Below are positions 29,680 through 49,546 of a DNA stretch of 64,000 nt, one piece after another. The position numbers and the translations under genes are program-made. Every line of letters starts with the position of its first letter. Position 1 is the stretch's first letter. The DNA lies in the NCBI GenBank assembly GCA_044892525.1, contig CM097885.1, positions 139,934,001 to 139,998,000 of the forward strand, in the 5' to 3' direction. This stretch comes from Schmidtea polychroa. Lineage: Eukaryota. The notes below the pieces were generated by a model. That model saw only the letters and a program-made list of their open reading frames with translations, did not search any database and had not been told where the DNA came from.

Positions 29680-29852
29680 AGATAAAAGGAAAGATAAAAA
29701 ATATAAAAATCGGGACCTGTATCCCAACCAAAAAATTAATGGTACAGTAAAAGTATGAAAGGGACTGTAACCCTGACTATAAAATAACATATAAATGTAT
29801 AAGTATAAGCCGCACTGTAGCGCAATTATTAATTATGTATATATTATAGAAA

Positions 29853-30554: not shown

Positions 30555-30609
30555 TTAAAGATGAATGATCAATGTAAATAATTGTAAATAAAAATTTTCG
30601 TATAGTAGT

Positions 30610-31236
30610 ATGTGGTTCGGAGTAACCCTGGTGACAATAATGATGATAGCGATAAACGGGATACCCATGTGGCAGCCAATCCCAACATTCTGGGAGAATC
30701 CCGAGAAACAGCAAAACCCTTTAACCAAACTAAAAAGCGAGAGAAAGCTCTCCAACAACATCCCGAAACAATGCTGGAACAAAGTCGTCTGGGAAAAACT
30801 TCAAATGCAACTCCACCTACAAACCCAAAAAATCGAACAGCTCGAAATTCTCTTACAAGAACAAACCACCCAACAATCCTTGAAGGAAATCATCATGAAG
30901 AAGGAAGTAAAAGAAAGCCAAGTCTTACTCTATACTACCATCAGTGAAACCCTTATCATCTGCGCACTAGTCATCTGGAAAGCGTATGATATTCATCGAA
31001 CATGGAGAAGAAACCAGTCACTATCCGAGAAACAAGAAAGAAAGAACCCACGATCGAAAAATAAACATAAACGAGCAGTACATTTTCAACAACCAAACCC
31101 ACCCGACCAAATGCAACAAAATCTATCTCCTGACCAAATGCCTGTTACAATCCAGCTCCCCACGATAACAACTTCAACCAGCCATCCGACCCAGAATTCA
31201 ACCAACCAAGACATTCCGAACCTTGAGATCATGTGA
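30610..31236 (+). CDS. Accessory type I membrane protein, 208 aa (SP, coiled-coil ectodomain, TM, P/Q/T-rich tail)
   Basis: SP MWFGVTLVTIMMIAING, TM VLLYTTISETLIICALVIW, basic stop-transfer residues follow. Confidence 0.75.
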   Translation: MWFGVTLVTIMMIAINGIPMWQPIPTFWENPEKQQNPLTKLKSERKLSNNIPKQCWNKVVWEKLQMQLHLQTQKIEQLEILLQEQTTQQSLKEIIMKKEVKESQVLLYTTISETLIICALVIWKAYDIHRTWRRNQSLSEKQERKNPRSKNKHKRAVHFQQPNPPDQMQQNLSPDQMPVTIQLPTITTSTSHPTQNSTNQDIPNLEIM

Positions 31237-31433
31237 CATCGACCATTCATAAACTTATTGTGTATAAATCCGGTCACCTAAAGTGGCCACTGCTTGCTTA
31301 TATTTGTCCTTTTATCTGTTTGATTAAAGTATTATTTAGTTATTTTAATTTTATGTTTGTGTGAATGTTGACCGTGAAATTAGTTGTTATGCCGAAAAAA
31401 GGTATGAGTTAAACGTATGATATTATGTGAATT

Positions 31434-31467
31434 GCGGGGCGCAATTTTAACGGGCCCCGGAGTGATT
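31434..31467 (+). promoter_or_regulatory. E1 PPT-equivalent region (atypical, GC hairpin)
   Basis: GCGGGGCGCAATTTTAACGGGCCCCGGAGTGATT directly before the 3' LTR. It resembles the E2 pre-LTR GCGGACATTATCTTAACGGCCCAGGGAGGAA. Confidence 0.5.
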
Positions 31468-34400: not shown

Positions 34401-35657
34401 TTTCCTGTGCTGATAAAAATGCCGATATCGCACAGCTCCACTTGTACATCGGGGAATTGAAGAAGAGAATTGACCTCTATGAGGGAACGTGGTTCTCCCC
34501 ACCACAAATGAAGGAGGAGAAGAGCAAGATTCTGCGTTTGGAGCACTGCCGTGACAGTCTCCTGGAAGAAAGCAGGTGCCAGAGGTTAACCATAAAGGCC
34601 CAATCAGAGGCACTGCACAAGGTGTATTCCGAATCAGAACTAGCGAAGCGAGTTCGCGAGTACCCGATACAAGATGGGACTAACGTGTTCCCAATGCACC
34701 ACAAATTAGCTGAAACCTCATCAATATCCAGTTGTAAAGGGCATGGCCCACAAATGCCGCCAATTCCCGCCCCAGTCCTTTCAGGCGATCGACCTATGGC
34801 TGGCGGTTCATCGGACCCTATCTTGGCTCCAGTACTCGTGCCACACCTCCTTCAGCCCCCAGCAGAAGCTACACTCCCCCATCGAAAGCGTAAGCGGCTG
34901 ACGCGTTCTGAAAAAAATCAGAAGCGGAGGAATGCCATGGCCGCGCTCGAAGCATCGCTATCTGTAGCCAAAGCAACTATCAAGGAAATTACAGTTACCC
35001 ATTCCATTCCTACAAAGGAAGTATTCCGGGTAGTTCCGGCCGGTAGTATCAAATTCCTCGAAGACCGCCGGCTGCCCGTTGACATCGACGAGATGCTCGC
35101 AGAGGGAGAAGCATTCTCGTAGCCAATTCTCTCTCGGGTCTCGATTCCCTGCTATTACGAACGAACTTGAAGAAGCGACGTTATCTCGTGACTAAACTTT
35201 AATGTTTTGCATTTACTTAAACAATGCTGAATGTAATTTGATGTTCCGTTCTAATATAACTGTTCGATTTTCTTTGATTGTGTTAATTGTATGTATGATT
35301 TGCTACGGTTGAATTGCATGAGAGAAGGATCACGAATATATAGTAGAAACTTAAATGTCGTACCTTTTGGACCAGGGTCAGACTGAATGATGCGTATAGA
35401 ATGGGTAAGACCTTCTAAGGCACCGTAGAACCCGAACCGAGAAAGGGTTAGGAGTAGTCCTAACGCAGGGGCTCACCTGCTAACTTTTTCCAACCCGTGT
35501 GAGCAGTACCAACGTGGAACATCACCACGGGCTCATACGTGGGAATATGCGAACGATCATTTGGAGTGTGTGAGGGAATGGTCTGAGTAGAATAATGATA
35601 CCTGATGCGGATGATAATCATGCCCATACGTTTTCTTTTCCCCCACATACGCCAACA
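31468..35657 (+). repeat. E1 3' LTR (4,190 bp)
   Basis: Copy of 5074-9263, followed by TSD CGAC. Confidence 0.97.
34358..35122 (+). CDS. 3'-LTR copy of the 254-aa LTR ORF
   Basis: Identical to 7964-8728 except T->K (SVATAT vs SVAKAT). Confidence 0.75.
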   Translation: MNTSTSSGKTLRPCFSCADKNADIAQLHLYIGELKKRIDLYEGTWFSPPQMKEEKSKILRLEHCRDSLLEESRCQRLTIKAQSEALHKVYSESELAKRVREYPIQDGTNVFPMHHKLAETSSISSCKGHGPQMPPIPAPVLSGDRPMAGGSSDPILAPVLVPHLLQPPAEATLPHRKRKRLTRSEKNQKRRNAMAALEASLSVAKATIKEITVTHSIPTKEVFRVVPAGSIKFLEDRRLPVDIDEMLAEGEAFS

Positions 35658-36036: not shown

Positions 36037-37084
36037 TGTTAGATGATGAGGGTAGGCCCATCACTACATTCAATTTAGATAAATATTATAGAACAGGGCC
36101 AGGCAAGTACAGGGTTAACGTGTACGCCGAAGAACGCCAGTAAAAGATTTCTCGTCGATACCCATCTATGAAAGCCAGATCGGCAACCAAACAATCCAAT
36201 TTCCCAAGCAAGAACCGATAGTTGAGCAGTGACTTTCATCGATATTCATTTATGTGTCAATAACCTTTATCGATATTCATTTATGTGTCAATAACTTTAT
36301 AATAATTTATTTTATTTCATGTGTGATTTATTGTAAAGAACACCATTTGTGAACTTTAGCAAACTCTGATCTTTTCATCGAATTTGTAGTGTGAATTTTT
36401 ATTTTTCAGTGTATTTTTTAATTTTAAACACAAATAAAAATAATGCATTTAAAAAAGAAATTAATTTAATTTAAAACTTACCACTAAAAATAATTCCAAA
36501 CATTTCCAATAAAATCAAAAGTAAACATAACATTTCCAATAAAATCAAAAATAAACATTTATATTCTGGTGAAAAAATCAATTCTAAAATAAACAGTTAT
36601 ATTAGAAAAATAAAAACCAATTTATTATATTAGAAAAATAAAACCAATTTAAAGTAAAAATAAACATTCGAATATAGAAAAAATAAAATAAATATTTATT
36701 TAATATTAGACATAGGAAAAATTTAGTATATAAGCAATCGTTAAAATCAGTTTATTCGCCCAAAAAATAGCGCAAAGATTTTATATTCGAAGGTAAATCC
36801 TGAGGATAATTCAATCATTTGAATCAGCACAAAACGATTCACAAATAATAAAAGCTTGCTAAGACACAACACGCACACACAACAAATAACAATACATATA
36901 CTTCTTTTTGCACGCATTTTGAGTTGAATAAATTGATAAACAAGTACCAACTTTTTTCAGAATTGTAACTGGATTTTATTTGGTAAATTTTATATTCAAT
37001 ACATTTTATTATATATTCGTCTTTGTTTTGATATATATATAAGAACCAGTAAGTTGGGTGTTCCCGATTATCGAGACCTCAACA
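36037..37084 (+). repeat. E2 5' LTR (1,048 bp)
   Basis: No differences from 48499-49546 in the segments compared by eye. Contains short internal duplications (TCGATATTCATTTATGTGTCAATAAC x2; AACATTTCCAATAAAATCAAAA x2). Confidence 0.97.
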
Positions 37085-37086
37085 TT

Positions 37087-37104
37087 TGGTGCCGCGAACC
37101 GGGA
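37087..37104 (+). promoter_or_regulatory. E2 primer binding site, most like tRNA-Phe
   Basis: TGGTGCCGCGAACCGGGA, 2 nt after the LTR. The vertebrate Phe PBS is TGGTGCCGAAACCCGGGA. The assignment needs the host tRNA set. Confidence 0.7.
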
Positions 37105-37323
37105 CTTTAAAATCAATTATTGTTATTCACAATTTGGGGGATAGGAATTGAGATCAGAGGGTATAGTATTTTATATTGGGAAAATATATTTATAAAAACA
37201 ATATCATTGACCAATTTTTAAATAAATAAATTCAGTTTTGAAAATTATTAAATAATTCAAAAAGATAAAATAGATAATCAACCCGAAATAGTTTATAATC
37301 TCAGAAATAGAATAGTCTATAGG

Positions 37324-39009
37324 ATGAATAATAATAATAATAATTACATAAAAATTTTACCAGTAGAACCATATAGAGGAGAGCCTGAAAAGTTCGACGA
37401 TTTTTTCACTGAGATCGCTCAGTATGCAGAAGCTTGTGGTTGGACACCTGATGAGTTAAAAATGAGAATACCACTATATTTAAAAGGTTATGCGTTACAG
37501 GCATACAATAACTTAGAATGTAAAGGAAATAATTTTGATCAACTCGTAAGATATCTGAGAGCAGAAATAGTAATCGATAGCGACTTACAAAAGATAAATG
37601 TTCAAAAATTTAGAAACAGATACCAAGGTACTAGAGAATCAGTTGGTGAATATGTATATACGATTACGGAGTTAGCGAAAAAGGCATTTGGTGCAGGCGA
37701 GCACACAGCAAAATTAATTGAGGATCAGTTTTGGAATGGTATACAAAAATATTTATATAAAGCACTAATTATGGTAGAATATGGTAATTTAAATGAATTA
37801 GTTCATAAAGCTAAGCGTATAGAAGCAATACAACGAGATAGATTTAGTTCACATGTAGATGCAATGGAAATTCAAAAGCCCATAGAGGTAAAATCTGAGT
37901 TGGGTAAGTCAGATGACAATATCCCCTGGGAGGAGATGAAGCAATTATATTTAAACTTTGTAAAAAATAGACGAAGGGTAAGCCCGAGTCCAGATAGAAG
38001 TCAATCACCTGAAAACAGGAGGAGGTTCGATAATGTGAGAAATAGAAATTTTGAGAATAGAAACAATAGAAATACTTTCGATAGAGACAATCGTAATGAA
38101 TATAATAGAAATAATTATACGAGAGATAATCGAGTCGATTTTAGTAGAAATAATTTGAGAAATAATAAATATGATAGAAATAATAGATATGATAATAGAG
38201 ATAATACAAATGAATTGAGACGTAGACAGACAAGTCCATATAGACAGAATTCATACAGAGAAAGGCGAGGGAGCCCTTATAATAATGATGGTAGAGATAA
38301 AGTAAATTTTAATGGACAAATCAAATGTTATAATTGCCAGAAATATGGTCACTTAGCTAAAGTATGCAATAATGCGCGAAGCGAATCGCCTAATAGAGTG
38401 AGATTTAAAAATGAGCCTGAGATAAAACAGATTAATAGTGCTGAGTTGATATCAGCTAATGATGAAATAAACAGTTTGAGAGAGGAATTAAAAGAATTTA
38501 AAACTCAATATGGGAGACTTATTGAGAGAAAGTTAGAAATGTCATTAAATGAGTTTCAGTGTTTTACCAATGATGTAGATATAGATAATGATGAGTTTCG
38601 TGAAGCAAGAGAAGCGGATGAGAAATTTCTTGCAGAAGCAAATAGATGTAAAGAATTAAAAGAGGAATTGAAAGAGACATTAGAGAAATGGCCTTATGAT
38701 GATAATGAGACATTGCGTATAATAAATAGAGTTCAAGTCGAAGGAATTGACTTAGAATATTTGAGAAATTTGATACCAATAATGGTAAAGAGACAAAATA
38801 TGACAAGAGTATTTGAATTAGAAATAGAATTGAAAGAAATGATAAAATGCTATGGTGAATTTGTGAGAAAAAATCAGAAATTACATGAGTCATTGAATAT
38901 AACTATTGAGGCAAAGGACCTTTCGAGAATACTTATGCGTAGTACAGGGGTACATGTTTGCACAAAAGTGAATAAAGTGAAACAGATGGCCCGAGAAATT
39001 GGGAGATAA
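37324..39009 (+). CDS. gag: E2 Gag (capsid-like, RN-rich linker, one CCHC knuckle, helical extension, first half of a Ubl domain), 561 aa
   Basis: PYRGEPEKFDDFF...YAEACGW...IPLYLKGYAL gag pattern; CYNCQKYGHLAKVC at ~38326. Confidence 0.93.
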   Translation: MNNNNNNYIKILPVEPYRGEPEKFDDFFTEIAQYAEACGWTPDELKMRIPLYLKGYALQAYNNLECKGNNFDQLVRYLRAEIVIDSDLQKINVQKFRNRYQGTRESVGEYVYTITELAKKAFGAGEHTAKLIEDQFWNGIQKYLYKALIMVEYGNLNELVHKAKRIEAIQRDRFSSHVDAMEIQKPIEVKSELGKSDDNIPWEEMKQLYLNFVKNRRRVSPSPDRSQSPENRRRFDNVRNRNFENRNNRNTFDRDNRNEYNRNNYTRDNRVDFSRNNLRNNKYDRNNRYDNRDNTNELRRRQTSPYRQNSYRERRGSPYNNDGRDKVNFNGQIKCYNCQKYGHLAKVCNNARSESPNRVRFKNEPEIKQINSAELISANDEINSLREELKEFKTQYGRLIERKLEMSLNEFQCFTNDVDIDNDEFREAREADEKFLAEANRCKELKEELKETLEKWPYDDNETLRIINRVQVEGIDLEYLRNLIPIMVKRQNMTRVFELEIELKEMIKCYGEFVRKNQKLHESLNITIEAKDLSRILMRSTGVHVCTKVNKVKQMAREIGR

Positions 39010-42000
39010 TGATAAAGTGAAACTGTATTTTAACGGCGTAGAAATGATGAATAATGAATATATAATTGACTATGGAGTAAACGTCATTGATAACAATATT
39101 ATTTCTGCAGTAATAGAAAGGCAAGAAAGTAAAGAAATTGATACACCAACTCCATCAGTAGAATTGAGTATAAACGACGAAAATGACTATGATAAATTAT
39201 TTAGATTGTGGGATGCTTCTTCAGGAGGAGCAATGAGGTCACCAACAGCTAGCGAGGAAATCTTTAAACCTATAGATACTAAATATGATAATTTACATGA
39301 GACAATAGAAAAAATTGCGAAACAAGCAAATATGCAGGATGCAGAGACGATGAGACGAGGTAGGGGAAGGCCTCGAAAATCGGAAATAGCCGAAAAGTCA
39401 GATGACAGAAAGGCAGCAGAGCGTTTAAGAGATATTGCAAATAATATGAGACAGGAAGTCCCAAAAAATCAGGATAATGACAAAGATATAAAGATGATAA
39501 CTGAATTAGTTAAAGCAATGAATATGAGACGATTTCCGGAAGCAAAACCATCAGCGTTAATAGAAAATATAGTTAAAAAGATTAAATTAATGGAAAAAGA
39601 GATTAGAGAATTGAGTGCAGAGGAAGCAAATGAAGAGACAGTGTTAAAGATATTATTTACAACAGGAGTTAATCGAGATAAAGTGATTACGGCAATGGCA
39701 TATTTAATAGCAAGATACAAGAAACTTTTGCGATTGAATCCAAAGAATCAAATAGAAAATATCGCTAAAATGATATATAATAAATTAAAGATAGATGCTA
39801 TGCCATGGATAAAATTAAAGGGAGGATGGAAAATACTGTATGATGAGAGTCTAATAGAAAGTGCTCAGGAAAGCGTAGAAGACAATATTAATGTAGAAAT
39901 AGATGATACGGAGGAAACAGTAAAAAATCTAGTAAATAAAACAACTATGAAACCAAGTCAAAAAGAAAGAAAGTCGACAATGTCAATAGTAATTATAGTA
40001 ATAACATTGTTATTAGATCTGATAAAAGGGAATAATGCGATCATAGCGTATGACTGTCAGAATCCTAAGTGGGGACAGAAATATTCATTATTAGATGTAG
40101 AAAATTGCCCAGAGGCTAATCCAACAAAACTAATTGTTGCAGATCCAAAGATTTTTCACATATATCAAGAGTCTGACTTCATTCACACTGAGGCAGGAGA
40201 GTGTATCGTTAAATATTCAGAGGAAAGTTTTGTATGTAATAAAATAGCGAGAACAATATTAACTCCAACATGGGCACCAGAAGCGATAATAATAGCACCA
40301 AGCGAATGTGAAAATGCATTTAAGACAAAAAGGATAAAAACGCCAGATGGATTTGAGTTAAATGCTCAGATAGGAGCACGAGTAAGGCAATTAGTAAATG
40401 TCGTTGGATGGTCATCAACAGGAGGATATTGTGAAGGAGGAACGTATAAAATATGGGGGCATGTAGCAGACAATATTGTAGTAAGACGACAATATTATAT
40501 TGAATTAAGGAAATTCAAGGCGTCATTTGATAGTTCATCAAAGAAAATGATGACACATAAGTTCTGCACATTAGATGAGACAAGCTGTGATACAGGCGAG
40601 TCAATGATCATATACAAAGTAAACAAATATGAATGCCATCTAACTAAACTAAAGACACTGAAATTCAGAACAATACGAAGTAAACAGTTCACGGATGTAG
40701 AATCCAAGAACATTAAAGACCAAAAACGACGAGCAACGATAATTCAAGAGAAAGATACACCAACGATATATATGTCAGATTCTGAAACAGAAGCGATGAG
40801 ATTTGTGGGGAAAGGTGAAAGTATCAAATGCGGAAAAGCAGTTATACAAACAAATTATGAAGGAATTTATATCAGCGGAAGTGAAATTAAAGAGGCAAAA
40901 TCGAAAATAGATAAATTCGATGTCAAGCTAGCGTCATACTTTAATAATAAAATCGATTACTTTTATCATCATCAGTTAGTACAATTGGACAAAGTATATC
41001 AAGCAACTATTGCAAACGATTGTAAACTTAACAGAGAAATTTTAAGAACAAAGATGGCGGTTGCAGTCACAAACCCAGATTTGATGGCACCAATTTTATT
41101 TGCAGAAAAAGGGACATTTGCAAGAGTCGTCGGTGAAGTGATACAAACATTTCAGTGCAAACCGGTTAGCGTATCTTTAGCAACGAATAATAAGTGCACA
41201 AACGAACTGCCAGTAGTGTATAAAGGAGAAACTGTGTACCTCCAACCAATAACAAGGATATTAACAGATAAAGACTATGTTCCGAGAAAAATTGATAAAT
41301 GTACTAATCTATTGGATCCATTATACAAAATAAATGATGATATGTGGATTACAATGTCAGATAGAAAAGAAGCGACTAAACCACAAAAACTAGAACTAAC
41401 CGAACTTGAGAAAAAGTTAGAATTTCAGGAAGTCAACGAAATGGAAAACAATGGGATGTATACGAGAGAGGCGATAGAAAGCGCCAGAAAACATATGTTA
41501 TTTCCTCATGAAAAAGAAAAAGTTCTTTCTATCATGGTAAACAAAATCATCGAAAATAGTTATGGAGGGAATTACAACTTTGATGTATTATTATCAAAAG
41601 AGCACTTCAAGAAAGTTGTGTATAGAGTATTATACAGCATATGGGGATATTTTGCGATTCTCGGAAATACGTTTTCCACTATATTGGGTATATATTATAC
41701 AGTAGCACTATTGAAAATGATTTGCTCATCATTAGTTTCGTTAAGACAACTGAGACAAGTTTTTGGTAATTCATATAAAATGATAGCATGTTTATGTCCA
41801 TTCATAGCCAAATATTTGATCACTGCGAGGCACGATAAGGAAATCAAACGGATGAAAAGTCGAAGGGAAGAGGGTGAAATAATGATCACCAATGAGAAAG
41901 AGGACGATACAAACAGATCAGAAAATACTGAGCAACCACATATTGGGTTATATGATAATCAAAGAGAACAATTGACAGAATTGAGAAATAATATTGAAAT

Positions 42001-45000
42001 TAGAATCCCAGGTGAAAATGGTAATTGTCATTGTGTTCCAAGGAAAACTTATGGATGTTACGGGTTAGAACTTGATGATATATTAGAAGGGTTAAATGAA
42101 GCAAGGCCTAAATTACAAATAGTGATAAATGATACGATAATAAAGGCATTATGTGACACAGGAGCAGCAGCTTCTATGATTCGTGAAGATCAGTTAACCG
42201 GAAACCAAAAGAAAAATATTGTGAGCACAAGAGATAGAGTAATTTCATTATCATCACATTACATACCATTAAAAGGAGATATCGAATTAACAGTCCACTT
42301 TTCGGATCAAGTGGTTGAACATGTCTTCAAGGTAGTAGCAGAATGTAAATGCGTATGTGTCCTTGGGATGGACATACTCAAAAAGTTAAAAAACTGTGTA
42401 ATCGATTTAACGGATAGTACAGTCAAACGGAAGGCAATATATCAAGACGCAAGATTTACTGAGGTAATTGCATTAGAGACATTTGAACTAGAGTATCAAA
42501 GTGATCATATAATTCCAGTAAAAGTTAATGTTAAAAGTGAGGACACTTTCACTTTCGAGCCTGAAACGGCAATATCACGAAATCATAACGTAATGTTAAC
42601 AGACGAGTGTGTAATTCCAAATAATGGGATAATTCCAATAAGAATCGCGAATTACGAAAGAAATAAAGTAAAAATTCATAAAGGTACAAAATTGGGAAAG
42701 TTGTTCAAAGGTGAATTAGAGCAAACATTTGAAGTATGTGAGATGTCGATGACGAAGGATGTCAGTGAAAGAATGGTCGAACAGAGTAGAGCGAATAATA
42801 TCAAATTTTATGATAAAATTAAAATAAATAATAATTATCTAAATGAAACACAACAACTACAACTACAAATATTACTTGACGAATACAGTGATGTTTTTGC
42901 AAAACACGAATTTGATTTAGGAGATACTGACATTATCAAACATGTAATCGATACAGGGAATGCTAGACCAATAAAACAGAGACCCTATAGTGTACCATAT
43001 AAACTGAGGGAGGAAATAAAACGACAAATTAAAGAATTAAAAGAGGCAGGCGTAATAAAACAAAGTTTTTCACAATGGGCATCACCTATCGTACCAGTTA
43101 GAAAGAAAGACGGGGAAATTCGAATGTGCATTGATTATCGTAAATTAAATGATGTAACAGTAAAAGACTCATACCCATTCCCAAAAGCACAAGAACAATA
43201 TGATAAACTTAGAGATACTAAATATTTCACAGTAATAGATGCAAATAAAGGCTACATGCAAATTCAAATGGAAGAGGGGGAGGCGGAAAAGACAGCTTTT
43301 GTGATAGAAGACGGTTTATATGAATATACAAGATTACCTTTTGGATTAACTAATGCGCCAGCAACATTTCAACGTTTAATGAATACAGTATTAGTAGACG
43401 TACAACATTGCGCAGTATATATGGATGATATATTAATTTCATCAAAAACATTTGAGGAACATCTAAAAGATATAGCTAACGTACTAGAAAGATTAAGAAA
43501 AGCAAAAATCAAAATAAAACATACTAAGTGTAAATGGGCAGAACCTTCAGCATTATTCTTAGGACATATAGTTACAGTAGATGGTATAATACCTAATCCC
43601 GATAAAATTGAAGTAGTTAAAAAATTCCCAGTTCCAAAAACATTACAACAAGTACAGGGATTTTTAGGTCTCACAGGATATTATCGTAAATTCATACAAG
43701 ATTATGCAAAAATAGCAGCACCACTAATTGAATTAACAAAAGGAGTCAAAACAAAGGGAGAGAGTAAAGGAGTGTTAATAGTGCAGGAAATTAACGATAA
43801 AATTAACAAGCCACAAAAGAAATGGAAAGATGAACATCAAAAAGCTTTTGATCAACTAAAAGAAAAATTAATAACAGCACCGATACTAAGATACCCAGAC
43901 TTTAAAAAACAGTTTATTATCATGACAGACGCCAGCGGGAAGGCCGTAGGGGCAGTCTTAGGACAAGAAGAGGAAAAGGGTAAAGATTATGTAATAGCTT
44001 ATGCAAGCAAAACATTAAAAGGAGCACAGATTAGGTACTCAACAATTGAGAAAGAATGTTATGCTATAGTTTTTGCATTAAAACAATTTAAACCATACAT
44101 ATATGGAACTGAAGTAGTAATTAGAACAGACCATAAGCCATTAGAAGGGTTATGGAAACATAAAGATACATCCAGTAGACTGTTAAAATGGGCAATGAAA
44201 ATACAAGACATGCACATAAAGATTGCATACAAACCAGGTAGAATAAACAGGAATGCAGATGCATTATCACGAATTCCAGAGTTAGGAGCACTAGAAGTTT
44301 TTGCATTAGTAACCGAAAAACCAATAGAAATATATGAGGAACAAATGAAAGATCCAGAACTCTTCAAGATAAGAGAAGAAATAAAAAAGGGAACTAACCA
44401 AAAGTATAAAATCTGTAAGAAGTTAATTGTTATTGAGGATTTTAGCGGTAAACAATTAATAGTAGTACCACAAAGATTAAGACAAATTCTTCTGTTACAA
44501 TACCACGATGGTGCTTTAGGAGGTCATTTATCAAGTAGGAAAACAGCAAGCAGATTGATGCAAAAATATTATTGGGACGATTTGAAAAAGGATGTCAAGA
44601 GATGGTGTAATGCATGCACAATATGCGCAACTAGAAAAAATACAGGAACAAAAACTAAAGCACCTTTACATCCAATCCCAGCTACAACATCACCAATGGA
44701 ATTGTGCGCAATGGATTTTTTGTGTAAACTACCCACAACAATTAAGGGGAATAAGCACATACTAGTTTTTAGCGATTATTTTACAAAATGGGCAGAGGCA
44801 TTTCCTACAAAAGATGAAACAGCAGAAACAGTAGCTAAATTACTTGTGGAAAAAATAATCTTTAAAATCGGTACACCGAGAAAATTACTAACAGATAAAG
44901 GGAAAAATTTCATGAGTGAAACTATAAAAAGAGTAGCTAACATATTTAACATGCATAAAATCAACACAACAGCATACCACCCTCAGACCGATGGTTTAGT

Positions 45001-46414
45001 AGAAAGATTCAATGGGACATTGCTAAGTAGATTAGCTGTGTTTGTGGGGAAAAACCAAAATGATTGGGATGAATACGTTAATCAATGTACATACATCCAT
45101 AATATCACACCAAATGAGACAACGGGATATTCACCATATTTTCTAATGTTCTTAAGAGAGCCTGCGACACCGATTGATACGATTTTTGAACCTCGAGTAT
45201 CACAATATTTAGATGCGCCAGATTATGTAACATTAATGCAAGAGAGATTACAAGAGGTATACAAGGTTGCAAATTTAAAAGTTAAATTCAGACAAGAACA
45301 ATATAAAGCAGATTACGATAAAAATAGCAAACCTCATAATTTTAAAGTGGGAGATAAGGTTAGACTTATGTCTCCACAAGTAGGAAAAGGCAAAACAACT
45401 AAATTAGCAAGACCATTTAAAGGACCATACGAGGTAGTAAAAGTAATACATGAAAACCTGCATTTACAAAAACATAAAAATGAGGATCCTATAATAGTAC
45501 ATGTTAACAGATGCAAATTAGCAGAAACAGAGTTAGTAGAAAAACCACCTCACAAATATGGATTACGATCGCAAAAAGCACTAATGATGGCAGCGACATT
45601 TTTAACAATTATAGGGTTGTGTAAATCAACTGAAGTGGAAAACGAAAACATACACTCAGTAGAATACATGGCTGAAGATATTTTAATCAACATTTCACCA
45701 TATAAAATTAGAGTATATAACTTAAATAAATCACCAATAAGAGACTTGTATCTGGAAACTAGGGATAATATACCCAAACTTATGAAAAAAATTGAAAATA
45801 GATCAACTAATGAATTTGAAAGAGGGGATAATGTTGAATTCGGAAATCTGCAACCCAACACTAATTACACACTTTGTGCACAATGGAATACATTAGTTGA
45901 CACATCACAGATAAGGTGTAAAAGACTAAAAACTACTAAAATAAACAGACTAAGAATAAGAAAACCAAAAGGAAAGAAGATATCAACAACCAGAAAAACA
46001 ACTACTATAAATTCAACACCCACACATCCTATATCACAAACGATAACGAATATATATAGGAAAACGACATTTAAAGCGGTTAGACAAATATATAAAAAAT
46101 TAATAATGAAAAATCCAAGACAGTCTGATAGGAAACTGATAAAATTACCTACAGGAAAACCGATAGTTATAAATAACTGGAATGAATTACAAGTATTTCA
46201 AAAGAAAGCAAGCAAACCACAATGGCCTTTTTATATAATAGCTACAAGTGTAGTATCATTCGCGATTTTAGCAATTGTCACTAGTGTACAAGTTTATAAA
46301 AAGTACAAGTGGAAAAGGCAGCGGTATCGGCACCGACTGGTCAAAGAAGCACCAGGGCATTTTCACTTGGACAAATATATCCCTGGACAATATACTCTGT
46401 CCACACTGGTATAA
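38999..46414 (+). CDS. pol: E2 polyprotein in the +1 frame: Ubl half-AT-hook-Bcl-2-like-chuvirus-type glycoprotein-PR-RT-RH-IN-SP/FN3/TM
   Basis: RRGRGRPRK; LFTTGVNRDKVI and WIKLKGGW; IIAYDC...YSLLDVENCP; LCDTGAA; YMDD (43418-43429); TDASG; integrase DDE and GPY; VEFGNLQPNTNYTLCA; TM FYIIATSVVSFAILAIVTSV. Confidence 0.96.
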   Translation: MGDNDKVKLYFNGVEMMNNEYIIDYGVNVIDNNIISAVIERQESKEIDTPTPSVELSINDENDYDKLFRLWDASSGGAMRSPTASEEIFKPIDTKYDNLHETIEKIAKQANMQDAETMRRGRGRPRKSEIAEKSDDRKAAERLRDIANNMRQEVPKNQDNDKDIKMITELVKAMNMRRFPEAKPSALIENIVKKIKLMEKEIRELSAEEANEETVLKILFTTGVNRDKVITAMAYLIARYKKLLRLNPKNQIENIAKMIYNKLKIDAMPWIKLKGGWKILYDESLIESAQESVEDNINVEIDDTEETVKNLVNKTTMKPSQKERKSTMSIVIIVITLLLDLIKGNNAIIAYDCQNPKWGQKYSLLDVENCPEANPTKLIVADPKIFHIYQESDFIHTEAGECIVKYSEESFVCNKIARTILTPTWAPEAIIIAPSECENAFKTKRIKTPDGFELNAQIGARVRQLVNVVGWSSTGGYCEGGTYKIWGHVADNIVVRRQYYIELRKFKASFDSSSKKMMTHKFCTLDETSCDTGESMIIYKVNKYECHLTKLKTLKFRTIRSKQFTDVESKNIKDQKRRATIIQEKDTPTIYMSDSETEAMRFVGKGESIKCGKAVIQTNYEGIYISGSEIKEAKSKIDKFDVKLASYFNNKIDYFYHHQLVQLDKVYQATIANDCKLNREILRTKMAVAVTNPDLMAPILFAEKGTFARVVGEVIQTFQCKPVSVSLATNNKCTNELPVVYKGETVYLQPITRILTDKDYVPRKIDKCTNLLDPLYKINDDMWITMSDRKEATKPQKLELTELEKKLEFQEVNEMENNGMYTREAIESARKHMLFPHEKEKVLSIMVNKIIENSYGGNYNFDVLLSKEHFKKVVYRVLYSIWGYFAILGNTFSTILGIYYTVALLKMICSSLVSLRQLRQVFGNSYKMIACLCPFIAKYLITARHDKEIKRMKSRREEGEIMITNEKEDDTNRSENTEQPHIGLYDNQREQLTELRNNIEIRIPGENGNCHCVPRKTYGCYGLELDDILEGLNEARPKLQIVINDTIIKALCDTGAAASMIREDQLTGNQKKNIVSTRDRVISLSSHYIPLKGDIELTVHFSDQVVEHVFKVVAECKCVCVLGMDILKKLKNCVIDLTDSTVKRKAIYQDARFTEVIALETFELEYQSDHIIPVKVNVKSEDTFTFEPETAISRNHNVMLTDECVIPNNGIIPIRIANYERNKVKIHKGTKLGKLFKGELEQTFEVCEMSMTKDVSERMVEQSRANNIKFYDKIKINNNYLNETQQLQLQILLDEYSDVFAKHEFDLGDTDIIKHVIDTGNARPIKQRPYSVPYKLREEIKRQIKELKEAGVIKQSFSQWASPIVPVRKKDGEIRMCIDYRKLNDVTVKDSYPFPKAQEQYDKLRDTKYFTVIDANKGYMQIQMEEGEAEKTAFVIEDGLYEYTRLPFGLTNAPATFQRLMNTVLVDVQHCAVYMDDILISSKTFEEHLKDIANVLERLRKAKIKIKHTKCKWAEPSALFLGHIVTVDGIIPNPDKIEVVKKFPVPKTLQQVQGFLGLTGYYRKFIQDYAKIAAPLIELTKGVKTKGESKGVLIVQEINDKINKPQKKWKDEHQKAFDQLKEKLITAPILRYPDFKKQFIIMTDASGKAVGAVLGQEEEKGKDYVIAYASKTLKGAQIRYSTIEKECYAIVFALKQFKPYIYGTEVVIRTDHKPLEGLWKHKDTSSRLLKWAMKIQDMHIKIAYKPGRINRNADALSRIPELGALEVFALVTEKPIEIYEEQMKDPELFKIREEIKKGTNQKYKICKKLIVIEDFSGKQLIVVPQRLRQILLLQYHDGALGGHLSSRKTASRLMQKYYWDDLKKDVKRWCNACTICATRKNTGTKTKAPLHPIPATTSPMELCAMDFLCKLPTTIKGNKHILVFSDYFTKWAEAFPTKDETAETVAKLLVEKIIFKIGTPRKLLTDKGKNFMSETIKRVANIFNMHKINTTAYHPQTDGLVERFNGTLLSRLAVFVGKNQNDWDEYVNQCTYIHNITPNETTGYSPYFLMFLREPATPIDTIFEPRVSQYLDAPDYVTLMQERLQEVYKVANLKVKFRQEQYKADYDKNSKPHNFKVGDKVRLMSPQVGKGKTTKLARPFKGPYEVVKVIHENLHLQKHKNEDPIIVHVNRCKLAETELVEKPPHKYGLRSQKALMMAATFLTIIGLCKSTEVENENIHSVEYMAEDILINISPYKIRVYNLNKSPIRDLYLETRDNIPKLMKKIENRSTNEFERGDNVEFGNLQPNTNYTLCAQWNTLVDTSQIRCKRLKTTKINRLRIRKPKGKKISTTRKTTTINSTPTHPISQTITNIYRKTTFKAVRQIYKKLIMKNPRQSDRKLIKLPTGKPIVINNWNELQVFQKKASKPQWPFYIIATSVVSFAILAIVTSVQVYKKYKWKRQRYRHRLVKEAPGHFHLDKYIPGQYTLSTLV

Positions 46415-48605
46415 TAACTTAAAAAATTTTAATTACATAAATTGGTTAATGATATATAATAAAAGTATATATATTAATATTTATATAACTGCGTATAAGG
46501 TTAAACCTCAAATGCGCAACAAGCATAAATATTTATTATTTGTTTTTAGAATAGTAATAAGAAGTTTATCGAGTCAATTCAGTCAAATCAATCCCCAAAT
46601 AAATCAGTCTAATCAAATCGATCCTCCAATAACCCAAAATCAAATCAGCCAATCTAATCAATCCAATCGTCTTCATTCAAACAAATCAATGCACCCACAT
46701 ACGTCAGTTCACATGCATTCTCAAAGAGCAAAACCTCAGCGAAATCCTGAAACTCAGAAAATAAGGCAATACGTGCCGATGTTACAGAAACACTACCACA
46801 GTTTCTATAAAAACCTGCAAAATAAGATCAGTACAGATGGTACTCCCATTACTATTAGAAGTTTCCCCAACCAAGTGTGCATTCCTAATGATATGAAAAT
46901 TGAGATAGAAGAAAGGGAATTGCATCTCATCAAATTCAACGAAGCAAGAAGAGTCAAATTAAGAGAATTAATCGGAGCGTATGACAAATTCCCCAATGCA
47001 GAGGAGGCTGCAAGAGCTGGAAAGAAAGTGCCCCATAGAATTTTATTTCACATCACAAAAACAGAGGTAGCAATATGCCAACAAAGGATACCATTAATCA
47101 CCACGAGCAATTGCACCATCACAATAAAAACTACAAAAAATGATCGCAGTGTCCCAAACGACTACAATGAATTGATAGTCCAAATGAACAGCCTACCCTG
47201 TGTCATAGCGATCGAAATATTATACATACCCACGATCCCAAATCCATTTCAGCAGTTGGAACTCATTAAATCAAACATTTATATGCATGGAGATTTCATC
47301 AGAAGAAAAATGTCATTTACCCACAAAGAATTATCCACGGCGGAGAGACATCATCTGATAATGTTTGTAGATGCAAAATTAGTATGCGACATCAACAATA
47401 ACTTCGGGCCAGTAGAGGTCAGCATACGGAATTTTAAGGGTGTAACAATATTTGATGAGAAAATTACACCTAGAACGAAAATCCTACATTATTATCCAGA
47501 GAAGACAAAGGCCAACAAGGAAAATATCATCGGGAATAAAGATGAATACAAAGCACTGGTCGAAATCCAACAGTTACTTTGCGGAAAAATAGTCGTAGGA
47601 TTCGACATCATCGGAAAACTCAAAGCTCTCACATTAGATCTCTATAATGTTATGGGAGTTAGAGAAATGTCGGAAGATATATTTATGTGCTCGTACGTCA
47701 AAAACGTTGCGCCACACAAGATAAAATTGTCCAACCTGGCATACCAGGTAATCAGACATCACAAAAGGTGGGACAAAGATAAACGCATAAATAGAATGCT
47801 GCGTGAACCCGAACCATTTCCAGCATGGCAAACCACAATGATCGTCAAAGTAATATACGCAATCGTAGAAAATCAATGGGAAGAAGTCGTTAAATGGGAC
47901 TCAGAGGCCTTCAGTGAACAACAAATGAAAGATCAATTATATCCCATTAAAGAAAGTGGTCTAGAGGATATGTCGGACGATGGAGAAGATATTTATATAG
48001 AACCATCGCAAATCGGATTGAAATTTAATAAAGATGGGACACGCAGGACTTTCGAAAATGAATTAATGGAAAGCGATGACGACATAATATTCATCGAAGA
48101 GGAGAAAATACGAATACCTGAAGCAACAGTCAAACTGGAATTACAGGAACCAAAATTCCATCCAGGAAAACTAATGGAATGCGACCTCGACTCTGATGAG
48201 GAATACTTCTCAATCAACGAGCAAGAGGAGGAAAATATGGATATAGACGAATTAGGACCAGAACCAGATATCGCAATCGAGGAGGAACCCAATTTTATCA
48301 TACCCAAGGAGAAGGAGCAGATTACAGAAAAGGAATTGACCCGACATTTTGGAAGGCGTATAAATGATGGCGACACATTAAATCTCGCATTGGCAAAAGG
48401 GTTCAACAGAACGAGGATGCTGATAAGAGACAGCGAAATCGAGCTGGTACGCAGTATAAGAGATAATGCGGACATTATCTTAACGGCCCAGGGAGGAATG
48501 TTAGATGATGAGGGTAGGCCCATCACTACATTCAATTTAGATAAATATTATAGAACAGGGCCAGGCAAGTACAGGGTTAACGTGTACGCCGAAGAACGCC
48601 AGTAA
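46275..48605 (+). CDS. E2 accessory ORF with a degenerate DEDDh (ISG20/REXO4-like) exonuclease domain (~47349-47875) and acidic tail, ending inside the 3' LTR; true start probably ATG 46512 or 46689
   Basis: IMFVDAKLV...VSIRNFKGVTIFDEKITPRTKILHY...IQQLLCGKIVVGFDIIGKLKAL...VREMS...IKLSNLAYQVI follows the REX4/ISG20 pattern. Confidence 0.75.
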   Translation: MSLVYKFIKSTSGKGSGIGTDWSKKHQGIFTWTNISLDNILCPHWYNNLKNFNYINWLMIYNKSIYINIYITAYKVKPQMRNKHKYLLFVFRIVIRSLSSQFSQINPQINQSNQIDPPITQNQISQSNQSNRLHSNKSMHPHTSVHMHSQRAKPQRNPETQKIRQYVPMLQKHYHSFYKNLQNKISTDGTPITIRSFPNQVCIPNDMKIEIEERELHLIKFNEARRVKLRELIGAYDKFPNAEEAARAGKKVPHRILFHITKTEVAICQQRIPLITTSNCTITIKTTKNDRSVPNDYNELIVQMNSLPCVIAIEILYIPTIPNPFQQLELIKSNIYMHGDFIRRKMSFTHKELSTAERHHLIMFVDAKLVCDINNNFGPVEVSIRNFKGVTIFDEKITPRTKILHYYPEKTKANKENIIGNKDEYKALVEIQQLLCGKIVVGFDIIGKLKALTLDLYNVMGVREMSEDIFMCSYVKNVAPHKIKLSNLAYQVIRHHKRWDKDKRINRMLREPEPFPAWQTTMIVKVIYAIVENQWEEVVKWDSEAFSEQQMKDQLYPIKESGLEDMSDDGEDIYIEPSQIGLKFNKDGTRRTFENELMESDDDIIFIEEEKIRIPEATVKLELQEPKFHPGKLMECDLDSDEEYFSINEQEEENMDIDELGPEPDIAIEEEPNFIIPKEKEQITEKELTRHFGRRINDGDTLNLALAKGFNRTRMLIRDSEIELVRSIRDNADIILTAQGGMLDDEGRPITTFNLDKYYRTGPGKYRVNVYAEERQ
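48490..48498 (+). promoter_or_regulatory. E2 polypurine tract
   Basis: AGGGAGGAA immediately before the 3' LTR TG. Confidence 0.75.
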
Positions 48606-49546
48606 AAGATTTCTCGTCGATACCCATCTATGAAAGCCAGATCGGCAACCAAACAATCCAATTTCCCAAGCAAGAACCGATAGTTGAGCAGTGACTTTCA
48701 TCGATATTCATTTATGTGTCAATAACCTTTATCGATATTCATTTATGTGTCAATAACTTTATAATAATTTATTTTATTTCATGTGTGATTTATTGTAAAG
48801 AACACCATTTGTGAACTTTAGCAAACTCTGATCTTTTCATCGAATTTGTAGTGTGAATTTTTATTTTTCAGTGTATTTTTTAATTTTAAACACAAATAAA
48901 AATAATGCATTTAAAAAAGAAATTAATTTAATTTAAAACTTACCACTAAAAATAATTCCAAACATTTCCAATAAAATCAAAAGTAAACATAACATTTCCA
49001 ATAAAATCAAAAATAAACATTTATATTCTGGTGAAAAAATCAATTCTAAAATAAACAGTTATATTAGAAAAATAAAAACCAATTTATTATATTAGAAAAA
49101 TAAAACCAATTTAAAGTAAAAATAAACATTCGAATATAGAAAAAATAAAATAAATATTTATTTAATATTAGACATAGGAAAAATTTAGTATATAAGCAAT
49201 CGTTAAAATCAGTTTATTCGCCCAAAAAATAGCGCAAAGATTTTATATTCGAAGGTAAATCCTGAGGATAATTCAATCATTTGAATCAGCACAAAACGAT
49301 TCACAAATAATAAAAGCTTGCTAAGACACAACACGCACACACAACAAATAACAATACATATACTTCTTTTTGCACGCATTTTGAGTTGAATAAATTGATA
49401 AACAAGTACCAACTTTTTTCAGAATTGTAACTGGATTTTATTTGGTAAATTTTATATTCAATACATTTTATTATATATTCGTCTTTGTTTTGATATATAT
49501 ATAAGAACCAGTAAGTTGGGTGTTCCCGATTATCGAGACCTCAACA
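48499..49546 (+). repeat. E2 3' LTR
   Basis: Copy of 36037-37084, followed by TTAA. Confidence 0.97.

What the first reader, a model, noticed from the sequence alone, without database searches (positions are those of the whole stretch)
39980..41830. E2 carries the same glycoprotein in the same position
Seen: SP MSIVIIVITLLLDLIKGNNA, then IIAYDC, YQESDFI, CGKAVIQTNYEGIY, NDCKLNREILRTKMAVA, GEVIQTFQC and GMYTREAIESARKHMLFP, all colinear with E1 despite clear amino-acid divergence. Inference: the gag-env-pol layout is an old feature under selection in a whole clade, not a one-off rearrangement.
Basis: partly seen in the sequence, partly recalled or inferred. Interest (0 to 1): 0.8.

Follow-up and report, generated by a model that had tools for sequence, protein, structure and literature searches.

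The report
Envelope gene inside a retroelement polyprotein
E2 is a freshly inserted gypsy-type retrovirus-like element whose envelope protein, a membrane-fusion glycoprotein of the kind chuviruses use, sits between gag and pol exactly as in its neighbour E1; the unusual gene order is real, old and conserved, but has already been described in other invertebrates.

Summary
Window 39980-41950 (+) encodes a complete glycoprotein with a signal-like segment, an ectodomain and a membrane anchor. It matches Pfam PF24664 (Monjiviricetes fusion glycoprotein) at E 8e-90. It is colinear with the E1 glycoprotein (34% identity, E 4e-111). Its model resembles chuvirus-type G proteins most closely and herpesvirus gB among solved structures, so it is a class III fusogen.

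E2 (36037-49546) and E1 (5074-35657) are both LTR elements with near-identical LTRs, 4-bp target duplications and Ty3/gypsy-type pol. In both, G lies upstream of PR-RT-RH-IN and in the same reading frame.

The inference is supported:
- Twenty-one gypsy-linked G proteins, including E1 and E2, form one clade (181/200 bootstraps), separate from the mosquito BEL/Pao capture.
- G and pol divergence are tightly correlated (Mantel r 0.90).
- Two pairs of relatives give G dN/dS of 0.02-0.03.
- E1 versus E2 is saturated at synonymous sites, so that pair gives no estimate.

The layout is not new. GAG-ENV-POL gypsy elements with gB-type envelopes were reported in nematodes, bryozoans and flatworms (Sacco 2022; Chary and Hayashi 2026).

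What may be new is the in-frame embedding, which suggests translation through an internal signal peptide, and a set of accessory genes: Bcl-2-like, exonuclease-like, TRAF-like and ankyrin.

The parts
36037..49546 (+). E2, complete LTR retroelement (13.5 kb), flanked by the 4-bp target-site duplication TTAA at 36033-36036 and 49547-49550
   Evidence: Direct repeat found and extended (1052/1052 identical, including 2 chance-matching bases on each side). TG..CA termini and the duplication were read.
36037..37084 (+). E2 5' LTR (1048 bp)
   Evidence: It is 100% identical to the 3' LTR.
48499..49546 (+). E2 3' LTR (1048 bp)
37087..37104 (+). Primer-binding-site-like 18-mer beginning TGG, 2 nt after the 5' LTR
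   Evidence: Read directly. The matching tRNA was not identified, and no tRNA gene lies in the window.
37324..39009 (+). E2 ORF1, gag (561 aa) with a CCHC zinc knuckle
   Evidence: It is homologous to the N-terminal part of E1's ORF and to the gag parts of relatives L005, L001 and L002 (E 6e-24 to 9e-20).
38999..46414 (+). E2 ORF2 (2471 aa): pre-G segment, G, PR, RT, RNase H, IN and a post-IN membrane module, with no internal stop
39416..39898 (+). Pre-G helical segment with weak Bcl-2-family likeness
   Evidence: Pfam Bcl-2 E 9e-5, 23.4 bits, below the 31.4 cut-off. Bcl-xL in PDB sequences scores only E 1.4-2. The AF2 model is low-confidence (pLDDT 46.7), yet all top 50 Foldseek PDB hits are Bcl-2-family chains at E 6e-3. 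It is alignable to E1 16750-17262 (23% identity).
39980..41950 (+). E2 glycoprotein G, the finding: signal-like segment 39980-40039, ectodomain, membrane anchor about 41681-41737, then the start of the cytoplasmic tail
   Evidence: Pfam PF24664 E 8e-90. Hydropathy peaks at ORF2 residues 326-344 and 895-913. AF2 pLDDT 84.8. Foldseek finds gB at E 4e-14 and chu-like virus G at E 2e-41. phmmer finds 1215 relatives, including a named chuvirus glycoprotein.
42098..42391 (+). Retroviral-type aspartic protease domain
   Evidence: Pfam RVP E 6.5e-7, residues 1034-1131.
43097..44983 (+). RT (43097-43573), RNase H (43823-44209), integrase zinc-binding and core domains (44465-44983)
   Evidence: Pfam RVT_1 3e-34, RT_RNaseH 2e-36, Integrase_H2C2 5e-18, rve 5e-9. 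The best solved relative is the Ty3 Gag-Pol polyprotein 7q5b at E 3e-109.
45551..46414 (+). Post-IN tail of ORF2: signal-like stretch, about 220 aa, then a strong membrane anchor (46232-46288)
   Evidence: Hydropathy 2.19 at residues 2412-2430. Hydrophobic post-IN segments occur in every relative that extends past IN. There is no significant sequence similarity to E1's equivalent.
46275..48605 (+). E2 ORF3 (776 aa), an accessory gene homologous to the exonuclease-domain ORFs that follow the polyprotein in relatives
   Evidence: No Pfam hit of its own. BLASTP to L005, L002 and L001 downstream ORFs gives E 7e-16 to 3e-12. Those ORFs carry Pfam RNase_T above threshold.
5074..35657 (+). E1, the comparison element (30.6 kb): LTRs 5074-9263 and 31468-35657, target duplication CGAC
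   Evidence: (4187/4190 identical).
11983..26418 (+). E1 single ORF (4811 aa): gag, long spacer, G, PR, RT, RNase H, IN, ankyrin repeats and a membrane-anchored tail
17326..19314 (+). E1 glycoprotein G
   Evidence: Pfam PF24664. phmmer envelope at residues 1782-2444. BLASTP to E2 G.

Best explanation
E2 is a very recently inserted, apparently complete Ty3/gypsy-type (Metaviridae) endogenous-retrovirus-like element of an animal genome. Its envelope gene is a class III membrane-fusion glycoprotein of the Monjiviricetes/chuvirus G family. An ancestor of a whole lineage of gypsy-type elements captured it once and kept it between gag and pol; E1 and E2 are two deeply diverged members of that lineage (shown). 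G is not a separate gene. It is embedded in frame in the Gag-Pol-type polyprotein: upstream sequence, hydrophobic signal-like segment, ectodomain, one strong membrane anchor, tail, then PR-RT-RH-IN (shown). The likeliest mode of expression is inferred, not shown. The ribosome reads through G and the internal signal segment targets the nascent chain to the ER. The ectodomain then enters the lumen while gag-side and pol-side parts stay cytosolic. Host signal peptidase would cut on the lumenal side and the element's own protease on the cytosolic side. This resembles the membrane-threaded polyproteins of flaviviruses. The released trimeric G would let particles fuse with membranes of other cells. 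In E2, gag lies in a separate overlapping ORF, so G-Pol would be made less often than Gag. In E1 everything is one ORF.
For: Element anatomy: identical LTRs, TG..CA ends, 4-bp duplications and a PBS-like site. Pol is of Ty3 type: Pfam domains in PR-RT-RH-IN order and the Ty3 Gag-Pol structure 7q5b as best hit at E 3e-109. G identity: PF24664 E 8e-90; a named chuvirus glycoprotein among the homologues; AF2 pLDDT 84.8; Foldseek top PDB hits are herpesvirus gB (E 4e-14, prob 1.0); top viral hits are chu-like, qin-related and xinmovirus G (E 2e-41 to 3e-31); 11 cysteines are invariant over 74 sequences. Shared ancestry and age: one clade of 21 gypsy-linked G proteins at 181/200; Mantel r 0.90 between G and RT-IN; E1-E2 G 34% and pol 41% identical. 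Selection: G dN/dS 0.03 and 0.02 in two pairs of relatives. In-frame embedding: G and PR-RT-RH-IN share one ORF in E1, E2 and every relative whose DNA was fetched (L001, L002, L004, L005, L007, L008), and in the more distant P0027, P0030 and P0024. Internal signal peptide: a hydrophobic segment precedes the conserved YDC motif in all 24 embedded G proteins, and 6 of the 24 have no methionine there from which G could start on its own. Hydropathy shows a signal-like peak and one strong anchor flanking the ectodomain.
Against: No transcript or protein data exist, so translation through G is inferred from reading-frame continuity alone. A splice joining an upstream start codon to the signal segment, or one removing G to make Gag-Pol, is not excluded. 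Several relatives, and weakly E2, show a second moderately hydrophobic stretch about 30 residues after the anchor. If that stretch spanned the membrane, pol would end up on the wrong side. E2's coding capacity is split into three overlapping ORFs, which means two changes of frame. I cannot tell whether these are programmed or defects: the one relative with a separate gag ORF (L002) changes frame in the other direction, while E1, L005 and L001 need no change. The trees are neighbour-joining on simple distances, and the core split holding E1 and E2 has only 63-70% support. The dS values used for dN/dS are high (1.4-1.7), so the ratios are approximate. The host species is unknown.
Confidence: 0.8

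Rival explanations
1. The element and ancestry are as above, but G is expressed like a conventional retroviral env, from a spliced subgenomic mRNA. Pol would then be made from a message in which the G region is removed as an intron. Reading-frame continuity through G would be a by-product, not the route of expression.
For: E1 and E2 both have methionines at the start of the signal-like segment, as do 18 of the 24 embedded G proteins. Spliced env messages are the rule in retroviruses and Drosophila gypsy (established knowledge). Equimolar Gag:Env:Pol from E1's single ORF would be an unusual stoichiometry.
Against: Frame continuity across both G junctions is kept in every element examined, down to 23-27% G identity. 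That is unexpected if ribosomes never cross the junctions. Six of 24 signal segments contain no methionine. No splice signals were tested.
Confidence: 0.3
2. E1 and E2 acquired their glycoproteins independently from different exogenous negative-strand RNA viruses, and the shared position is convergent.
For: Capture of chuvirus-type G has happened more than once: the mosquito BEL/Pao elements carry a separate G lineage placed at the C-terminal end (PMC7642597). The published POL trees do not place all GAG-ENV-POL elements in one clade (PMC13524379).
Against: E1 and E2 G fall inside one clade made only of gypsy-linked embedded G proteins (181/200). No stand-alone G is closer to either than 26% identity, against 34-40% within the clade. 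G and pol distances co-vary.
Confidence: 0.03
3. The G region is a decaying passenger, a non-retroviral chuvirus fossil that landed in a retrotransposon, with no present function.
For: Most Jingchuvirales-derived glycoprotein fossils in arthropods lie next to fragmentary LTR elements without evidence of capture (PMC10084718).
Against: There are no stops in about 657 codons in either element despite 66% amino-acid divergence between them. The cysteine scaffold is conserved and the model is confident. dN/dS is 0.02-0.03 in relatives. G is in frame with pol. No chuvirus N or L genes are nearby.
Confidence: 0.03
4. E2 is a non-autonomous or defective copy. Its two changes of frame between gag, the G-pol ORF and ORF3 would be lesions carried over from a defective template, and only E1-like single-ORF elements would be competent.
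For: E1, L005 and L001 encode gag-G-pol in one ORF. E2's frame change at the gag junction is in the opposite direction to that of relative L002.
Against: Identical LTRs leave essentially no time for decay after insertion. Separate gag and pol ORFs joined by frameshifting are normal for Ty3/gypsy elements (established knowledge). ORF3-type genes are separate ORFs in all relatives too.
Confidence: 0.2

Closest known systems
GAG-ENV-POL 'errantiviruses' of Nematoda, Bryozoa and Platyhelminthes (Chary and Hayashi, eLife 2026, PMC13524379; bioRxiv 2023)
   Same: Ty3/gypsy-type pol, an envelope of the herpesvirus-gB-like class III fold, env placed between gag and pol, intact multi-ORF copies with near-identical LTRs, and the conclusion that the arrangement is ancient.
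   Different: That paper treats GAG, ENV and POL as ORFs and does not discuss in-frame fusion, polyproteins or how env is expressed: 'polyprotein', 'fused' and 'in-frame' each occur 0 times. It discarded LTR pairs more than 14 kb apart, so an E1-sized element (26.4 kb spacing) would have been missed. Whether E1 and E2 belong to one of its clades could not be tested because its sequences are not held.
Non-canonical nematode endogenous retroviruses (Sacco et al., J Gen Virol 2022, 103:1739; known here only from its title and its citation in PMC13524379)
   Same: A metavirus (gypsy-type element) that captured an RNA-virus glycoprotein gene, with env and pol in flipped order.
   Different: The paper is not held, so no sequence or detail could be compared. 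Its hosts are nematodes; the host here is unidentified.
Anakin and other mosquito BEL/Pao elements with chuvirus-derived glycoprotein (Dezordi et al. 2020, PMC7642597)
   Same: The same glycoprotein family: PF24664, 23-25% identity to E2 G, E 9e-42 to 2e-35.
   Different: They have a different retroelement superfamily (Pao protease PF05380). G lies at the C-terminal end, after pol. Their G proteins form a separate clade, 200/200, that never joins the gypsy-linked clade.
Glycoproteins of exogenous Jingchuvirales (chuviruses) and related Monjiviricetes
   Same: Homologous over the full length (22-26% identity, E to 1e-47), with the same cysteine scaffold. They give the best structural matches.
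   Different: Those are stand-alone genes of about 650 aa in negative-strand RNA genomes. Here the protein is a segment of a reverse-transcribing element's polyprotein.
Herpesvirus glycoprotein B (class III fusion proteins)
   Same: The fold: Foldseek E 4e-14, probability 1.0, about 600 aligned columns to postfusion gB.
   Different: Only 10-12% identity and TM-score about 0.4. No sequence-level match to any PDB chain. The likeness is structural, not family membership.
Flavivirus-type membrane-threaded polyproteins (works-like comparison, from established knowledge)
   Same: A cytosolic structural part, an internal signal sequence, a lumenal glycoprotein, a membrane anchor, and cytosolic enzymes in one translation product.
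   Different: No homology. The topology here is inferred from hydropathy and frame continuity only.

Membership tests
Ty3/gypsy (Metaviridae) LTR retroelement | Long terminal repeats with TG..CA ends and a 4-6 bp target-site duplication | tested here: met
   E2: 1048-bp LTRs, 100% identical, TG..CA, duplication TTAA. E1: 4190-bp LTRs, duplication CGAC.
Ty3/gypsy (Metaviridae) LTR retroelement | Pol domain order PR-RT-RNaseH-IN, with RT/IN closest to Ty3/gypsy | tested here: met
   Pfam domain order. The best solved relative is Ty3 Gag-Pol 7q5b at E 3e-109, against 3e-40 for a caulimovirus and 1e-28 or weaker for retroviruses. No phylogeny against a reference set of gypsy clades was possible.
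Ty3/gypsy (Metaviridae) LTR retroelement | Gag with a CCHC nucleocapsid knuckle, and a primer-binding site next to the 5' LTR | tested here: met
   zf-CCHC in ORF1. A TGG-initiated 18-mer lies 2 nt after the LTR. The cognate tRNA was not identified.
Monjiviricetes/chuvirus-type fusion glycoprotein (Pfam PF24664) | Full-length match to the family profile above the curated threshold | tested here: met
   302 bits against a cut-off of 27, profile positions 4-636 of 653. E1 scores 195.7 bits.
Monjiviricetes/chuvirus-type fusion glycoprotein (Pfam PF24664) | Named exogenous-virus members come back as homologues | tested here: met
   P0036 is the putative glycoprotein of Wufeng shrew chuvirus 2, E 3e-42. 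The top BFVD hits are chu-like virus glycoproteins.
Monjiviricetes/chuvirus-type fusion glycoprotein (Pfam PF24664) | Type I membrane-protein layout (signal peptide, ectodomain, C-terminal anchor) and a conserved disulfide scaffold | tested here: met
   Hydropathy peaks at both ends. All 11 invariant cysteines are kept. No dedicated signal-peptide or topology predictor was available.
Class III viral fusion proteins (gB / rhabdovirus G / GP64) | Class III fold | tested here: met
   Model pLDDT 84.8. There are 114 PDB matches at E 1e-3 or better, and all 50 listed are herpesvirus gB.
Class III viral fusion proteins (gB / rhabdovirus G / GP64) | Trimer formation, bipartite fusion loops, fusogenic activity | not tested
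   Only a monomer was modelled and coordinates could not be inspected. Activity is not testable with these tools.
GAG-ENV-POL errantiviruses (PMC13524379) | ORF order gag, env, pol with an HSV/gB-type ENV on a Ty3/gypsy POL | tested here: met
GAG-ENV-POL errantiviruses (PMC13524379) | Placement inside one of the published POL/ENV clades, and their cysteine-bridge configuration classes | not testable with these tools
   The published sequences and supplements are not held.
GAG-ENV-POL errantiviruses (PMC13524379) | Multiple copies above 98% identity in the same genome | not testable with these tools
   Only one 64-kb window is available, and it holds one copy of each element. Relatives occur as 20-21 near-identical sequences across samples.
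Non-retroviral endogenous chuvirus element (EVE) | A glycoprotein fossil without functional linkage to a retroelement's genes, usually degraded | tested here: not met
   G is intact and in frame with PR-RT-RH-IN inside an LTR pair.

The most novel reading that the evidence does not exclude
E1, E2 and their metagenomic relatives may represent a lineage of large enveloped reverse-transcribing elements (13-30 kb). They would make their class III fusogen from inside the Gag-Pol polyprotein through an internal signal peptide. That is a membrane-threaded polyprotein strategy not described for retroelements. They would also carry host-manipulation-type accessory modules: a Bcl-2-like domain just before the signal segment, which would then act as its membrane tail anchor; a post-integrase membrane protein; an exonuclease-family gene; and, in E1, ankyrin repeats and a TRAF-like gene. 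Such a gene repertoire is more typical of large DNA viruses than of LTR retrotransposons.
Probability: 0.3. Interest if true: 0.7.

Novelty: new member of a known kind. Interest (0 to 1): 0.45.

Why it matters
The finding adds two intact, very young and deeply diverged members, one of them 30 kb long, to the recently recognised gypsy-type elements that carry a class III envelope between gag and pol. It supplies quantitative support that the envelope and polymerase have travelled together under strong purifying selection. The frame continuity gag-side/G/pol in every member examined turns a descriptive oddity of gene order into a testable question. Can a retroelement translate its envelope as a membrane-threaded segment of its polyprotein? 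Transcript and peptide data from a host species could settle that. The accessory genes suggest these elements are more virus-like in gene content than retrotransposon annotation implies.

Tried and rejected
I used moderately diverged relatives instead. A near-identical pair (L005/L006) had only 5 differences in G, too few to use.
- Host identification failed by every route. No tRNA genes. The flanks give only a SMAD MH2 exon and a hAT-like ORF. The closest G, pol and TRAF relatives are all unnamed ENA, JGI or Logan metagenome sequences. Accession searches in the literature found nothing usable. One distant relative lies in NCBI assembly GCA_029980105.1, whose organism I could not look up.
- Sequence search of G against PDB chains gave no hit. 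Only the fold comparison worked.
- The C-terminal membrane modules of E1 and E2 show no significant similarity to each other (E 2.6), so homology is not claimed.
- The pre-G regions across the clade are too diverged to build a useful profile. Only E1 and E2 align.
- The supplements of PMC13524379 and the Sacco 2022 paper are not held.
- The Troyka paper (PMC12440569) was read and is not relevant: different termini, and no env.
- Assembly artefact or chimera was rejected because both elements have matched LTRs and target duplications.
Full report
**What is there.** The window holds two LTR retroelements side by side on the + strand.
- E2 spans 36037-49546. It has 1048-bp LTRs with no differences, TG..CA termini, a TTAA target duplication and a TGG-initiated primer-binding-like site 2 nt after the 5' LTR.
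- E1 spans 5074-35657. It has 4190-bp LTRs differing at 3 positions and a CGAC duplication.
- E2 codes in three overlapping ORFs: gag 37324..39009, a 2471-aa ORF 38999..46414, and a 776-aa ORF 46275..48605.
- E1 has one ORF of 4811 aa, 11983..26418.
- No in-frame stop interrupts gag, G, PR, RT, RNase H or IN in either element. E2 has two changes of frame between its ORFs and E1 has none. I cannot tell whether E2's frame changes are programmed.

**The observation.**
- Pfam places PF24664 (Monjiviricetes fusion glycoprotein) on residues 330-980 with E 8.4e-90. PR, RT, RNase H and IN follow in the same ORF.
- E1 has the same family between its gag and its PR-RT-RH-IN.
- The two G proteins align colinearly: 34% identity over 575 residues, E 4e-111.
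- They are the only two G copies in the window.
- Hydropathy shows a signal-like segment at the start and one strong membrane anchor at the end of the E2 ectodomain.

The G region extends about 120 nt beyond the stated end.

**What the protein is.**
- An exhaustive phmmer search found 1215 relatives. Stand-alone proteins of about 650 aa match at 22-26% identity. One of them is annotated as the putative glycoprotein of Wufeng shrew chuvirus 2.
- An alignment of 74 family members has 11 invariant cysteines, all kept in E1 and E2.
- AlphaFold2 on that alignment gave a confident model, pLDDT 84.8.
- Against predicted viral structures, the best matches are glycoproteins of chu-like, qin-related and xinmo-type viruses, E 2e-41 to 3e-31.
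- Against the PDB, all 50 listed matches are herpesvirus gB, best E 4e-14 and probability 1.0. No PDB chain matches by sequence.

So 'chuvirus-type G' is right at family level, and the fold is class III. This is what Chary and Hayashi call an HSV/gB-type ENV.

**What the element is.** RT-RH-IN of E2 matches the Ty3 Gag-Pol polyprotein (7q5b) at E 3e-109. That is far ahead of caulimovirus, foamy-virus and gammaretrovirus enzymes. With the domain order and LTR anatomy, E1 and E2 are Ty3/gypsy-type elements. E1 and E2 pol are 41% identical over 1168 residues.

**Is the layout shared, old and selected?**
- A search restricted to long proteins returned 12 polyproteins (1582-4029 aa) from environmental assemblies with G at 36-40% identity to E2. 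All 12 carry PF24664 and a retroviral-type protease, and eight also carry RT, RNase H and IN.
- More distant ones (P0027, P0030, P0024; 25-31% identity) have the same order, and P0024 includes a gag domain before G.
- In all six relatives whose DNA I fetched, G and pol share one ORF.
- In a neighbour-joining tree of 52 G domains, the 21 gypsy-linked embedded G proteins, including E1 and E2, form one clade in 181 of 200 bootstraps.
- The three mosquito BEL/Pao-linked G proteins, which sit after pol, form their own clade in 200 of 200 and never join.
- The inner split holding E1 and E2 is weaker, 63-70%.
- Across 11 polyproteins with both domains, pairwise G identity and pairwise RT-IN identity correlate with Mantel r 0.90, exceeded in 0 of 5000 permutations.
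- Two pairs of relatives at a usable distance give G dN/dS of 0.03 (640 codons) and 0.02 (664 codons). This equals the RT-IN value of 0.03 in the pair where RT-IN could be estimated. The other segments range from 0.08 to 0.24. With dS at 1.4-1.7 these ratios are approximate, but pN of 0.03-0.04 against pS of 0.64-0.68 is unambiguous.

The inference is therefore supported, and the stated refuting outcome did not occur.

**How it probably works.** The following is inferred, not shown.
- G is never a free-standing ORF in this clade. Upstream protein sequence always precedes it and, where the sequence extends beyond G, a protease domain follows it in the same ORF.
- A hydrophobic, signal-like segment immediately precedes the conserved YDC motif in all 24 embedded G proteins. 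In 6 of them that segment and its approach contain no methionine, so G cannot start there on its own.
- The simplest reading is that ribosomes read through G and the internal signal segment inserts the chain into the ER. The ectodomain would then be lumenal, with the gag-side and pol-side parts cytosolic. Signal peptidase and the element's protease would release the pieces.
- This works like a flavivirus polyprotein, but there is no homology to one.

Reasons for caution:
- There are no transcript or peptide data.
- Splicing is untested.
- A second, weaker hydrophobic stretch follows the anchor in several members.
- The low-confidence loop of the model (G residues about 239-251) contains dibasic residues in both E1 and E2. 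This could be a proprotein-convertase site, but it was not tested.

**Comparison with what is known.** The gene order is published.
- Chary and Hayashi (PMC13524379) report Ty3/gypsy elements with HSV/gB-type ENV arranged GAG-ENV-POL in Nematoda, Bryozoa and Platyhelminthes. They argue the arrangement is ancient and not monophyletic on POL.
- They credit Sacco et al. 2022 for nematode elements that arose when a metavirus captured an RNA-virus glycoprotein. That paper is not held.
- They also note that the chuvirus-like glycoprotein of mosquito BEL/Pao elements occurs next to gypsy POL in arthropods.
- Dezordi et al. described the mosquito capture (PMC7642597). They later found gypsy fragments near such glycoproteins but no clear gypsy capture in arthropods (PMC10084718).
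- The eLife text does not mention polyproteins, fusion or reading-frame continuity. Its pipeline excluded LTR pairs more than 14 kb apart, so E1-sized elements would be missed.

I therefore rate the finding as a new member of a known kind. The in-frame embedding and the accessory genes are possibly new aspects.

**Other things seen.**
- *Bcl-2-like segment.* The segment just before G in E2 has convergent but individually weak Bcl-2-family signals. Pfam is below threshold and Bcl-xL scores E 1.4-2 by sequence. The model is low-confidence (pLDDT 46.7), yet its top 50 PDB matches are all Bcl-2-family chains at E 6e-3. E1 has an alignable segment in the same place. More distant relatives do not.
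- *ORF3.* E2 ORF3 is homologous to ORFs that follow the polyprotein in relatives and carry an RNase_T exonuclease domain. In the alignment, E2's copy does not keep all the positions conserved in the others.
- *Post-integrase modules.* Every polyprotein that extends past IN has strongly hydrophobic post-IN segments.
- *E1 accessory content.* E1 has ankyrin repeats after IN. Inside its LTR pair it has an intronless RING-TRAF-MATH ORF at 27036..28424, whose nearest database relatives are only 23-29% identical. The element's strong A-over-T strand bias continues through that region.
- *Relatives in assemblies.* Some relatives are the longest or second-longest contig of their assemblies and recur nearly identically in about 20 samples.

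**Limits.** The host is unidentified. The trees are distance-based. The expression mechanism is inferred.

Noticed in passing
window 39416-39898 (E2) and 16750-17262 (E1): A helical segment immediately upstream of the G signal segment shows convergent but weak Bcl-2-family likeness. Pfam is sub-threshold. The AF2 model is low-confidence, yet its top 50 Foldseek PDB hits are all Bcl-xL, Mcl-1, Bcl-2 or A1. If G's signal segment stays attached after cleavage, it would serve as a C-terminal membrane anchor, as in cellular Bcl-2 proteins.
   Followed up: partly
window 27036-28424 (inside E1, between the polyprotein and the 3' LTR): An intronless 462-aa ORF with RING, TRAF zinc-finger and MATH domains, that is, a TRAF-like protein carried by the retroelement. 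Its best database relatives are only 23-29% identical and unnamed. Three further ORFs (28642..29679, 29853..30554, 30610..31236) have no significant family match; the last has only a sub-threshold Otopetrin hit.
   Followed up: partly
window 46275-48605 (E2 ORF3); L005 14249-15688, L008 9547-11622, L002 19559-21613, L001 13230-14729: A conserved accessory gene downstream of the polyprotein carries an RNase_T (DEDD-type exonuclease) domain in relatives. E2's copy is homologous but falls below the Pfam threshold and does not keep all conserved positions.
   Followed up: partly
window 45551-46414 (E2) and 25390-26415 (E1); post-IN parts of P0001-P0012, P0027: Every polyprotein of the clade that extends past integrase ends with one to three strongly hydrophobic segments, forming a second membrane-protein module in the place where env normally lies. 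E1's and E2's modules are not detectably similar to each other.
   Followed up: partly
window 23400-25300 (E1 ORF, after IN): Two blocks of ankyrin repeats lie within the E1 polyprotein (Pfam Ank_2, E 6e-17). Relative P0002 also has ankyrin repeats.
   Followed up: no
window 5074-9263 and 31468-35657: E1's LTRs are unusually long (4190 bp). Each contains a 254-aa ORF (7964..8728 and 34358..35122) with no family match. The E1 leader has an 80-bp tandem repeat at 10723-11202.
   Followed up: no
window 39300-39400 (E2), about 16650 (E1), and L002/L008 pre-G regions: An AT-hook-like basic Gly-Arg-Pro motif recurs in the pre-G region of E1, E2 and two relatives (alignment).
   Followed up: no
L005, L006 (ENA ERZ2272167, ERZ2272266) and clusters of P0006, P0008: Relatives of about 16-17 kb are the longest or second-longest contig (NODE_1, NODE_2) of their assemblies. 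They recur in about 20 sequences (two looked up came from different samples) at over 90% protein identity. The two copies compared differ at only 35 coding positions (whole-ORF dN/dS 0.14). The sample type is unknown.
   Followed up: partly
L002 2334-5753: Fragmented bacterial-type genes (MacB, ABC transporter, YknX-like, TetR) lie next to a relative of the element on a long metagenomic contig. This could reflect horizontally acquired genes in a micro-invertebrate host or a chimeric contig.
   Followed up: no
window 59660-60271 (-), 55545-56165 (+), 62617-64000 (+): Host flank: an exon encoding a SMAD MH2 domain (Pfam E 2e-36), a hAT-dimerisation-like ORF, and at the window's end the start of a third, different RT-bearing element (42% identity to E2 RT over 88 aa).
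   Followed up: partly
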